A stretch of 64,000 bases of DNA. Source: Diadema antillarum (taxonomy: Eukaryota). The notes below the pieces were generated by a model. That model saw only the letters and a program-made list of their open reading frames with translations. It ran no database searches and was not told where the DNA came from. The stretch's first letter is position 1. The number at the start of each line of letters is the position of its first letter. Below are positions 36,360-38,345 of the stretch, one piece after another. The position numbers were made by a program, and so were the translations under genes. Where the stretch lies: positions 62,001 through 126,000 of the forward strand of contig NW_027271112.1 of NCBI RefSeq assembly GCF_040938485.1, given 5' to 3'.

Positions 36360-36497
36360 AAGCAAGTTACCCCAGGACAGATTTCTCCATGGGCAGCCTT
36401 CAAAGAAGGAGGCATTGAGAGTGCTGCTGCTGCCAGCAAACTTGAACCGGCAACCTCATGAGTGTCTATTGTCTCATCTCTTGAGTCACAACAGCTC
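36360..36497 (-). mobile_element. Possible degenerate tRNA-derived SINE
   Basis: Minus strand reads GCTGTTGTGACTCAA (A-box-like; the same 15-mer occurs on + near 16350) followed by GGTTCAAGT (B-box-like, 36448-36440). Weak. Confidence 0.3.
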
Positions 36498-36510
36498 TAT
36501 GTGAATGTGA

Positions 36511-38030
36511 CCATGGGGCTATTACGAGCCCTTTGGTTGAGATAAATATTAAGATTTTAAGTTTTTGCCCATCTGCCCATGTCGATGGCCGTTGACTTAT
36601 AGTTTGATACTTCTTCCTCGGGTTTCTTGCTGTGTAGACCTTCCTTAGGCATTGAAACTTACTCAGAACTGATATCAGGTGTTCCTTTCCTTCTGCATTT
36701 GCAATGAGCTCCATGGGGCTATTACAAGCCTTTGGTTGAGATTAAGATTAAGATTTTAACATTTTGCTCATCTGCCCATGTCGACGGCCGTTGACTTATA
36801 GTTCTATACCTCTTCTTCCTCCAGGTTTCTTACCCTGTAGACCTTCCTTAGACATCGAAACTTACTCAGAAAGGATTTCAGGCGTTCCTTTCCTTCTTCA
36901 TTTACAATGAGCTCCAAGAAACATGATTCGTTTTGAGGATTGAAGAGCTCCCTGGCATGATTGCCAGGTATCATTAGGTTTGGCGCCAACCCAATCATTT
37001 CACGAACATGGTCATTCAACCGCTTCTCGGCATCGTCCAGGAGTTCCTTTACGTCATGTGTTGCCTCCCACACCTGCACACCTGCGATCTCTCTCATGAT
37101 CAGTTTCTTGAAAAACTGACCTAAATTGATGACAGCATGTGTTGAATCTAGAAGTTTCATTCCGGGATCAGAAAGGAGAATGGGCCTGCTTTTCACTCCC
37201 TTGGCGATGTCGCCCAATTCTGCCTGCGAAAGTTTGTCTGGATTGATTTCCAAATAAGATGCTAGGTCTGCAGTCTCCATGTAGGTCCGGTCAATCTTGA
37301 AGTTTCCAAGTTCCAACTTGGCTGATTCTCAAGTGGCATGGCATAAAGTGCAAAGGTCTTTCGAGCCACTACCTTTCAATCCTCCGTCAGACCTATCAAG
37401 TTTTTCGTTGATCATGGAGTTGTAAATTTTGAGGCGATGCAGACATGTGGAGTTTACAGTGTATGTTTTCATCACTTGGCCTTGCATGAGGTTTCTCTTG
37501 AACTCATTGTCACGCGCAACTAAATAGCTTTTGATGGCGAGTTTCTGTCTCCAATGGCTTCTAGAATCGGCCTGTTGATGTGCATGGCATTGGGCTTCTG
37601 CTCCTTGGAAGTCTGTGATTCGAGTGCCATCCTTCTTCACCACCTCTGACTGAAGAACTGCAAATGCTGCCCTGAATGCCTTGTCAGGCAAATAGTGTTG
37701 GAGGAGCCATTGTAAAATGGAATGTCCCCCATTCCATCTACACCATCTTTGATTGCGGTGTGCAGGATAAGCTCTGGATCATCAGTGAAAATCCATGCTG
37801 GGCGAGCCCTTCAATGATGTCTATATCCAGCTCCTCCAATGTTTTTGCGACAGCCTCTCTGTAACTCCACATCACACCTACAACTGTATGCAGTTTGACT
37901 CGGCAATCTCTCGAACAATGGCAGCCCCCCGATCACCTGTGGCTCAAACATATTACTGATGTGGGTCATTTGGAGATCCTATCGTTTGACAGGGGTGTGA
38001 TGCATGTAGCTGCTGGTAACCATCATGCCA
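36511..38030 (-). pseudogene. Degenerate RAG1-core-like (RAG1L/Transib superfamily) transposase fossil
   Basis: Collinear RAG1-core motifs across shifting frames: WSYREAVAKTLEELDIDIIEGL; KDGVDGMGD (D600-equivalent, codon 37738-37736); PDKAFRAAF; EQKPNAMHINRPIL; NSMINEKLDRSDGGLKGSGSKDLCTLCHAT; ELGDIAKGVKSRP; LDSTHAVINLGQFFKKLIMREIAG; HVREMIGLAPNLMIPGNHARELF; LIVNEEGKERLKSFL...LRKVYR. Several frameshifts and stops. Confidence 0.85.
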
Positions 38031-38054
38031 AAGAATGCACTTCCAGGCATGAAA

Positions 38055-38345
38055 GATGGCTCCCTCTATGGGGAATTCAAAGTTTTTGAAGAAATTTGGT
38101 CTTGAAATGGCTGAGATATCCAAAAACAAAAGAGGTCCTAATGAAAAATGGGACCCACCTTTTATTAGGACCTCTTTGTTTTCAGATATCTCAGCTTTTC
38201 TAAACCATTTCTTTAGTAAAAGTATAAACTTTGAATTCCTCTTAGAATTGTATACTCTTGAATATCTCATAGTTTCTAATTACAAAATATCTCGTAAAAA
38301 GTTAAAATCTGAATTCCCCATTTCAGCTAAACCTATACCATCCCT
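38055..38345. mobile_element. Partial TTAA-TSD MITE (right portion) abutting the 5' end of the RAG1-like fossil
   Basis: Contains GAAATGGCTGAGATATCCAAAAACA and ends CCCT|TTAA like the family above. The left TIR was not found. Confidence 0.7.

What the first reader, a model, noticed from the sequence alone, without database searches (positions are those of the whole stretch)
36511..38030. RAG1-core-like transposase fossil (RAG1L/Transib superfamily) between SMIM26-like and a Gypsy element
Seen in sequence: the minus-strand frames give, in order, WSYREAVAKTLEELDIDIIEGL / KDGVDGMGD / LPDKAFRAAF / EQKPNAMHINRPILEAIGD / NSMINEKLDRSDGGLKGSGSKDLCTLCHAT / FKIDRTY / ELGDIAKGVKSRP / LDSTHAVINLGQFFKKLIMREIAG / HVREMIGLAPNLMIPGNHARELF / ELIVNEEGKERLKSFLSKFRCLRKVYR. 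Recalled vertebrate RAG1 core has the same order: [23 protein letters not shown] / KESCDGMGD (D600) / VPEKAVRFSF / EAKPNSELCCKPL / [28 protein letters not shown] (D708) / HSITRSH / ELRDRVKGVSAKP / [23 protein letters not shown] / [23 protein letters not shown] / ELIPSEERHEALRELM..MKPVWR. Inference: the DGMGD and DEKL..GL..SGS..CTLC signatures are closer to RAG1/RAG1L than to canonical Transib (KWGCDG, MxDGK). The divergent NSMxDEKLDR version may mark a distinct RAG1-like transposon lineage, which bears on the origin of V(D)J recombination. The ORF track shows only two unlabelled fragments of it.
Basis: partly seen in the sequence, partly recalled or inferred. Interest (0 to 1): 0.92.

Follow-up and report, generated by a model that had tools for sequence, protein, structure and literature searches.

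The report
Decayed RAG1-like transposase gene fragment
This is a broken, truncated leftover of a RAG1-like (RAGL-B) transposase gene, a kind of relic already described in sea-urchin genomes; the more interesting thing is elsewhere in the same genome, where an intact RAG-like transposon appears to have moved recently.

Summary
All ten peptides are on the minus strand, and window 36771-38065 is collinear with residues 311-740 of Diadema setosum RAG1L (tblastn E 1e-89). PDB's best match is amphioxus RAG1L (6b40, E 4.9e-29), against 1e-9 for mouse RAG1; no Transib chain matched.

It is a pseudogene:
- It has 5 frameshifts and 3 in-frame stops.
- It has Asn where the catalytic D708 should be.
- The N-terminal third is missing, as is the C-terminal part that carries the third catalytic residue.
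- No RAG2L partner, TIRs or TSDs were found.

It is not a new lineage. With its sister copy on contig C30, it is sister to a Lytechinus pictus RAG1L, inside the echinoid clade that holds SpRAG1L (RAGL-B). Solitary RAG1L pseudogenes in sea urchins are already described (PMC9885083).

Found in passing and more notable: the same genome holds an intact 12.7-kb RAG1L-RAG2L transposon at two unrelated loci (C652 and C862). The copies are 99.2% identical, with 17-bp CAC-type TIRs, perfect 5-bp TSDs and a precise empty site on contig C3. A similar two-copy element occurs in D. setosum. The papers I read report no such element in echinoids.

The scan had not noted this family on other DNA; s1-217777 concerns a different, Transib-like element.

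The parts
37886..38065 (-). RAG1L fossil, segment 1 (about P0002 residues 311-368), with one in-frame stop; the 5' limit of homology
   Evidence: tblastn with P0002; family HMM positions 339-365; three-frame read
37783..37875 (-). Segment 2, in a different frame (WSYREAVAKTLEELD...)
   Evidence: HMM positions 398-431
37694..37783 (-). Segment 3, after a further frameshift; holds KDGVDGMGD, the equivalent of the first catalytic Asp (D600), which is retained
   Evidence: HMM positions 432-462
37605..37694 (-). Segment 4 (YLPDKAFRAAF...), after a frameshift
37523..37606 (-). Segment 5 (EQKPNAMHINRPILEAIGD...), after a frameshift
   Evidence: HMM positions 491-517
36771..37526 (-). Segment 6, 252 codons in one frame with two in-frame stops. 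Holds SMINEKLDR (Asn at the D708 equivalent) and the CTLC zinc ligands. Homology ends at about P0002 residue 740, before the third catalytic residue. The ORF 36804-37280 is the annotated 158-aa protein P0001.
36511..36713 (-). Tandem duplicate (about 200-bp unit, 88-91% identical) of 36711-36916, repeating the last about 40 codons of the fossil
   Evidence: the repeat finder families D1, D2, D4; blastn; HMM positions 721-773
38062..38350 (.). Very high-copy palindromic MITE-like repeat that abuts and bounds the 5' end of the fossil (not part of RAG1L)
   Evidence: Inverted repeats I1-I3; summed contig depth about 10^5-10^6 against about 20-50 beside it

Best explanation
Window 36469-38065 (minus strand) is a dead, solitary fragment of a RAG1-like (RAGL-B family) transposase gene in an echinoid genome. 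A copy of the single-exon RAG1L core was left here, by transposition or duplication of a RAGL element. It then lost its N-terminal third, its C-terminal part (with the third catalytic residue and the ZnH2 histidines) and any RAG2L partner and terminal repeats. It has since drifted nearly neutrally, gaining frameshifts, stops, a catalytic Asp-to-Asn change, a small tandem duplication of its tail, and a MITE and retroelement debris at its 5' side. The whole block was afterwards duplicated, or persists as two very divergent haplotypes (C224 and C30). It has no transposase function now. Shown: homology, lesions, truncation, phylogenetic position, the second copy. Inferred: the order of events and the original mode of arrival.
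For: Homology. Lesions: 5 frameshifts and 3 in-frame stops, and Asn aligned to the Asp of mouse RAG1 'YDEKL' and amphioxus 'VDEKW'. Truncation: only positions 339-773 of an 885-position RAG1L HMM are found anywhere in window 15-45 kb. No RAG2L remnant turned up in window 15-45 kb or in 18 kb of C30, although relatives carry RAG2L tail-to-tail. No CAC-type TIR/TSD pair flanks it. Near-neutral drift: differences between the window and C30 copies fall 24:20:30 and 28:23:30 over codon positions, and omega in the true frame (0.39-0.41) lies close to the control frames (0.45-0.97). The C30 copy carries different lesions, DGAYGMGD and ID*KLD. Phylogeny: sister to L. pictus RAG1L P0195 (97/96) within the SpRAG1L/Diadema clade (100/100). 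The literature describes the same class of object in sea urchins (PMC9885083; bioRxiv 10.1101/100735).
Against: The 158-aa ORF is annotated as a protein in the public record (P0001). Omega in the true frame is the lowest of the six frames tested. The fragment is kept in two copies, and in contigs of a second species label. None of this outweighs the frameshifts, stops and missing catalytic parts. No RNA data were available.
Confidence: 0.9

Rival explanations
1. A truncated but domesticated RAG1L-derived gene: a 'type II' solitary RAG1L with a non-nuclease role, as proposed for PlRAG1Lb in Paracentrotus. The 158-170-aa ORF would be expressed.
For: ORF 36804-37316 is open for 170 codons and is annotated as a protein (P0001). 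True-frame omega is about 0.4. Domesticated solitary RAG1L genes exist in sea urchins (PMC9885083).
Against: The ORF is only a piece of a longer homology that is broken by 5 frameshifts and 3 stops. The C30 copy breaks the same stretch by a frameshift. Codon-position differences are uniform, and one control frame gives omega 0.45-0.51. No RNA run was found.
Confidence: 0.05
2. A representative of a new RAG1-like transposon lineage, distinct from the known RAGL families.
For: It is only 42-46% identical to the intact RAG1L copies of its own genome and 50-58% to the best named protein.
Against: It nests with strong support next to an annotated L. pictus RAG1L, inside the SpRAG1L clade. The 'signature' motif is the common echinoderm one plus a mutation.
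Confidence: 0.02
3. An internally deleted, non-autonomous RAGL element that can still be mobilised in trans by the intact RAGL transposase of this genome.
For: Intact RAGL elements are present in the same genome. Related fragments of the same sublineage lie at another locus (C557/C1974).
Against: No TIR/TSD pair was found around it, and neither the C652 nor the Diadema TIR occurs next to it. The only full-length second copy sits in a block of at least 45 kb that is collinear with the window, so it arose by duplication or is an allele, not a transposed copy.
Confidence: 0.02

Closest known systems
Solitary ('type II') RAG1L sequences and RAG1L pseudogenes of sea urchins (Yakovenko et al. 2023, PMC9885083; Morales Poole et al. 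2017, bioRxiv 10.1101/100735)
   Same: Unpaired RAG1L copy in an echinoid genome, with no TIRs and no RAG2L, partial and broken, and clustered with partial duplicates. It belongs to one of several echinoid RAG1L lineages.
   Different: This is a different species and locus. This copy is demonstrably dead, with catalytic residues lost, whereas some type II genes are expressed and intact.
SpRAG1L of Strongylocentrotus purpuratus (Fugmann et al. 2006) and the L. pictus RAG1L P0195 / D. setosum RAG1L P0002
   Same: Same clade in the tree (100/100), same core architecture and motifs (DGMGD, SMIDEKLDR, CTLC). It is 50-58% identical over the core.
   Different: Those genes are intact, multi-exon and paired tail-to-tail with RAG2L. 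The window copy is a truncated core fragment without a partner.
Amphioxus ProtoRAG / BbRAG1L (PDB 6b40)
   Same: Best solved-structure match (E 4.9e-29); same RAGL-B family.
   Different: ProtoRAG is a complete active transposon with TIRs and 5-bp TSDs. The window fossil has neither.
Vertebrate RAG1
   Same: Collinear core homology (E about 1e-9); the D600-equivalent motif and CTLC are conserved.
   Different: Much more distant than RAG1L, and this is not a recombinase gene. The genome's best PF12940 score is 242 bits, so no true RAG1 is present.
Transib transposase
   Same: Same DDE superfamily by established knowledge.
   Different: No Transib structure matched at E<=1, while RAG1L and RAG1 did.

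Membership tests
RAG1/RAG1L core (Pfam PF12940) | Significant, collinear match to the RAG1 core profile | tested here: met
   PF12940 33.8 bits against a cut-off of 25 on the 170-aa piece. Own-genome scan E 3.2e-13 at C224:98831-99547. RAG1L HMM positions 339-773 matched in order. tblastn E 1e-89.
RAG1/RAG1L core (active enzyme) | DDE catalytic triad (mouse D600, D708, E962) | tested here: not met
   The D600 equivalent is present (DGMGD). The D708 equivalent is Asn. The region of E962 (GEGNEA in intact copies) is absent.
RAG1/RAG1L core (active enzyme) | Uninterrupted reading frame | tested here: not met
   5 frameshifts and 3 in-frame stops between 38065 and 36771.
RAGL transposon (ProtoRAG type) | Convergent RAG2L (kelch + PHD) gene next to RAG1L | tested here: not met
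   An HMM built from five own-genome RAG2L sequences finds nothing (best E 1.1) in window 15-45 kb or in the C30 copy. The same HMM finds RAG2L next to the L. pictus relative at E 9e-83.
RAGL transposon (ProtoRAG type) | CAC-initiated terminal inverted repeats flanked by 5-bp target-site duplications | tested here: not met
   The strict scan found none within about 20 kb on each side; the loose scan gave chance-level hits only. The same scan recovered exactly one pair in each positive control.
RAGL-B family (as opposed to a new lineage) | Clusters with SpRAG1L/BbRAG1L-type proteins | tested here: met
   100/100 clade with SpRAG1L and Diadema RAG1L; sister to L. pictus P0195 at 97/96. SpRAG1L is placed in RAGL-B by PMC7204232. 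No confirmed RAGL-A, -C or -D reference was in my tree, so the A/B boundary itself was not tested.
Transib | Closer to Transib transposase than to RAG1/RAG1L | tested here: not met
   The PDB search returns RAG1L and RAG1 only.

The most novel reading that the evidence does not exclude
The fossil may be a relic of an earlier wave of a RAGL-B transposon family that is still (or was very recently) transposing in this sea-urchin genome. An intact 12,738-bp RAG1L-RAG2L element with 17-bp CAC TIRs sits at two unrelated loci: C652:273048-285785 with TSD TTTTA, and C862:119004-131760 with TSD TCACG. The copies are 99.2% identical, and contig C3 holds a precise empty-site allele. This would be a transposition-competent RAGL element with insertion polymorphism in an echinoid. 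The literature I read says such elements have not been found there.
Probability: 0.8. Interest if true: 0.75.

Novelty: new member of a known kind. Interest (0 to 1): 0.3.

Why it matters
The window fossil adds one more dead RAG1L copy to a class already catalogued in sea urchins. It does not bear on the origin of V(D)J recombination beyond confirming that several RAGL-B sublineages coexisted and died in echinoids.

The by-product is worth more. Echinoid RAGL loci have been regarded as immobile, TIR-less and domesticated or fossilised (PMC9885083; PMC10629977). A complete element with TIRs, 5-bp TSDs, two near-identical insertions and an empty-site allele would give echinoderms a candidate live RAGL transposon. 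A parallel two-copy element occurs in Diadema setosum. Such an element could be compared with ProtoRAG and tested for how RAG2L, the TIRs and transposition evolved.

Tried and rejected
- **PF03089 (vertebrate RAG2):** it found nothing in the genome and nothing in the controls, so it was uninformative. I replaced it with a protein query and an HMM built from own-genome RAG2L.
- **Rfam on the window:** no hits.
- **Organism name:** run and organism names are coded, and own-genome records are withheld. I inferred only 'echinoid close to Diadema'. The basis is 81-89% amino-acid and 87% DNA identity of the C559 fragment to D. setosum RAG1L, plus shared repeats at 80-90%.
- **Allele or paralogue (C224 against C30):** unresolved.
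  - The two are collinear over at least 45 kb at 88-95% identity.
  - Three samples each show both forms at similar depth, which leans towards a fixed duplication.
  - Allelic divergence of about 6% is seen elsewhere in this assembly.
- **dN/dS:** true-frame omega of about 0.4 looked like constraint, but the control frames and the even spread over codon positions show it is not distinguishable from neutral drift with a transition bias.
- **Diadema element ends in the own genome:** the left end has no match, and the right end matches only a short remnant at C640/C365. I did not pursue this.
- **C862 empty site on C129:** It is inferred only from the absence of the TIR and of any RAG1L hit on C129.
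- **TIRs around the L. pictus relative:** none found within the 10-kb flanks held.
- **Consensus or repaired sequence:** none was built. Breaks were read with X only.

Full report
**1. What is in the window**

A 170-codon ORF (36804-37316) matches Pfam RAG1 (PF12940) at 33.8 bits, E 1.4e-8, profile positions 370-519 of 653. The adjoining 120-codon ORF matches profile positions 237-357.

Against solved structures, the 170-aa piece hits amphioxus RAG1L (6b40_A) at E 4.9e-29 and vertebrate RAG1 chains at about 1e-9. The 120-aa piece hits 6b40_A at E 3.7e-12. No Transib chain is returned.

A search of 1.84 billion representative proteins found 138 relatives. The best named ones are 'V(D)J recombination-activating protein 1-like' proteins of echinoderms: Diadema setosum, Asterias and Amphiura. 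After those come Ptychodera, Branchiostoma and, far behind, turtle RAG1.

tblastn with the Diadema protein (P0002, 853 aa) aligns its residues 311-740 collinearly to window 38065-36771, at E 1e-89 with 155/307 identical in the main HSP.

**2. Anatomy and state**

Reading the three minus frames against P0002 gives six segments joined by five frameshifts: 38065-37886, 37875-37783, 37783-37694, 37694-37605, 37606-37523 and 37526-36771. There are three in-frame stops.

- The first catalytic motif is retained (KDGVDGMGD).
- The second is not. The fossil reads SMINEKLDR where intact echinoderm copies read SMIDEKLDR. The Asn aligns with the Asp of mouse 'YDEKL' and of amphioxus 'VDEKW'. By established knowledge that residue is D708 of the D600/D708/E962 triad.
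- The CTLC zinc ligands are present.

An HMM built from 11 full-length RAG1L proteins finds only positions 339-773 of 885 anywhere in window 15-45 kb. The N-terminal third is therefore missing, as is the C-terminal part, which in intact copies holds the GEGNEA motif with the third catalytic residue.

The last 200 bp or so of the fossil is tandemly duplicated: 36511-36713 matches 36711-36916 at 88-91%. The 5' limit abuts a palindromic MITE-like repeat of very high copy number at 38062-38350. Beyond that lies debris of LTR retroelements, with rve integrase, aspartyl protease and a gag-like ORF.

No RAG2L remnant is detectable in window 15-45 kb, and no CAC-type TIR/5-bp TSD pair flanks the fossil. 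The same scan recovered exactly one pair in each positive control.

**3. The second copy**

The window is G000:C224:62001-126000, in a 1.75-Gb assembly of 2963 contigs. The fossil has one full-length relative at the DNA level, at C30:4675891-4677216 (87% identity). This is not a transposed copy. Window 1196-46000 is collinear with C30:4642617-4683214 at 88-95%, and that block includes the MITE and the retroelement debris.

C30 has an extra tandem copy of the 3' 750 bp. Its lesions differ from the window's: DGAYGMGD, ID*KLD and a frameshift after GQFF. The stop after CTLCHxT is TGA in two copies and Gln in the third. This fits independent CpG decay of a CGA Arg codon, which is inference.

Differences between the window and C30 copies are spread evenly over codon positions (24:20:30 and 28:23:30). 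Omega in the true frame (0.39-0.41) is near that of some control frames (0.45-0.97). Drift is therefore essentially neutral.

Contigs of three samples of the same species each show both forms at similar depth, and a second species label also carries the stretch at about 8-10% divergence. Whether C224 and C30 are old paralogues or very divergent haplotypes remains open.

Shorter fragments of the same sublineage lie at C557 and C1974 (74-82% DNA identity). No intact member of the sublineage was found in the genome.

**4. Which family**

The genome holds at least 31 PF12940 matches. In a maximum-likelihood tree (25 rows, 576 columns, LG+C20+F+G4; quick version):

- The window and C30 copies pair at 100/99 support.
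- They are sister to an annotated Lytechinus pictus RAG1L (P0195) at 97/96.
- They sit inside a 100/100 clade with S. purpuratus SpRAG1L, D. setosum RAG1L and another own-genome fragment (C559).

The literature places SpRAG1L in the RAGL-B family (PMC7204232). The L. pictus relative is intact and has RAG2L tail-to-tail 3 kb downstream. The window copy has lost that partner.

The fossil is thus a member of a known echinoid RAGL-B sublineage, not a new lineage. The host is inferred to be an echinoid close to Diadema. The C559 fragment is 81-89% identical in protein and 87% in DNA to D. setosum RAG1L, and interspersed repeats are shared at 80-90%.

**5. What is known**

- Yakovenko et al. (PMC9885083) report 3-7 RAG1L sequences per sea-urchin genome.
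  - About 60% of them are unannotated potential pseudogenes.
  - They state that TIRs were not identified around RAGL genes in any echinoid genome.
- Morales Poole et al. (bioRxiv 10.1101/100735) describe many TIR-less RAG1L-RAG2L copies in sea urchins, and fossil elements with TIRs in a starfish.
- Martin et al. [quoted passage not shown]

The window object is a textbook case of the already described pseudogene class.

**6. Mechanism**

- **Shown:** homology, truncation, lesions, lack of a partner and of ends, near-neutral drift, and duplication of the whole block.
- **Inferred:** a RAGL-B copy arrived by transposition or duplication. It was truncated on both sides within the large core exon, decayed, and acquired a MITE and retroelement insertions. 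The block was then duplicated or diverged as haplotypes.

It has no present function (confidence 0.9). The main rival is a domesticated short ORF, because P0001 is annotated in the public record. I rate that at about 0.05.

**7. Noticed while searching for relatives (outside the window)**

(a) In the window's own genome, the intact RAG1L-RAG2L pair on C652 lies in a 12,738-bp element, C652:273048-285785.

- **Ends.** They read 5'-CACAACGGCAAATCCCC and, in reverse complement at the other end, CACGACGGCAAATCCCC. The flanking 5-bp TSD is TTTTA.
- **Second copy.** It lies at C862:119004-131760, is 99.16% identical over 12.78 kb, has entirely unrelated flanks, and carries its own TSD, TCACG.
- **Empty site.** Contig C3 (around 755410) carries both C652 flanks abutting, with a single TTTTA, which is a precise empty site.
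- **Copy number.** The TIR occurs exactly four times in the assembly.
- **C862 allele.** The flank of the C862 copy matches C129 at 98%, and C129 has neither the TIR nor a RAG1L hit.
- **Coding capacity.**
  - The RAG1L of this element is covered without stops over residues 1-811 of the Acanthaster homologue, in three exons.
  - It keeps DGMGD, IDEKLD and GEGNEA.
  - Its neighbour matches amphioxus RAG2L (6b40_M, E 2.6e-20) and ends in a PHD finger.

(b) D. setosum carries a 14,775-bp RAG1L-RAG2L element on two chromosomes.

- The two copies are 99.2-99.4% identical.
- The ends read CACGTTCAGCTT and, at the other end, AAGTTGAACGTG.
- The TSDs are CGCCT and CAGTT.

These elements look recently mobile, which the papers cited above say had not been seen in echinoids. 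I found no paper describing them in the library searched, but that library is incomplete.

**8. Verdict**

It is a RAG1L fossil, but not a new lineage and not informative on V(D)J origins. It is a new member of a known kind, of low interest in itself. The intact, apparently mobile RAGL elements deserve their own follow-up.

Noticed in passing
Own genome, outside the window: G000:C652:273048-285785 and G000:C862:119004-131760; empty site near G000:C3:755410 (loci L033+L036, L054-L056, L058): Complete 12.7-kb RAGL transposon at two unrelated loci, 99.2% identical. It has a 17-bp CAC TIR (1 mismatch), perfect 5-bp TSDs (TTTTA and TCACG), an open three-exon RAG1L with all three catalytic motifs, and a tail-to-tail kelch+PHD RAG2L. 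Contig C3 carries a precise empty-site allele. It looks like recent transposition in an echinoid, which the published work I read says has not been observed.
   Followed up: yes
Diadema setosum GCA_964275005.2: L046 6588-21362 (OZ188196.1) and L047 6593-21221 (OZ188186.1): A 14.8-kb RAG1L-RAG2L element on two chromosomes, 99.2-99.4% identical, with unrelated flanks. The 12-bp TIR is CACGTTCAGCTT / CACGTTCAACTT, and the 5-bp TSDs are CGCCT and CAGTT. The RAG1L proteins (853 aa) are identical at both sites.
   Followed up: partly
window 38062-38350: Palindromic MITE-like repeat of extremely high copy number: summed contig depth is 10^5-10^6 in four runs of two species labels. Many contigs join across it on opposite strands.
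   Followed up: partly
window 38634-43488 (minus strand): Debris of LTR retroelement(s): rve integrase (38634-39080), a gag/PNMA-like ORF (39989-40747) and an aspartyl protease (43047-43466). The order does not fit one intact element. Observed only.
   Followed up: partly
window 1196-46000 against G000:C30:4642617-4683214: Collinearity of at least 45 kb at 88-95% identity between contigs C224 and C30. This is either very divergent haplotigs or an old segmental duplication. Three samples each show both forms.
   Followed up: partly
Own genome: C184:2606819-2609600 with RAG2L at C184:2594197-2594934; C19 and C952 RAG1L/RAG2L pairs: Further RAG1L-RAG2L pairs of other sublineages. C184 has a RING-bearing N-terminus and groups away from the echinoid clades in the tree. 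The C19 and C952 pairs carry stops. Their ends were not examined.
   Followed up: no
Own genome: C640:1691579-1691933 and C365:603488-603844: Short match (81-89%) to the right terminal 200 bp of the D. setosum RAGL element. It may be a remnant or a non-autonomous relative.
   Followed up: no
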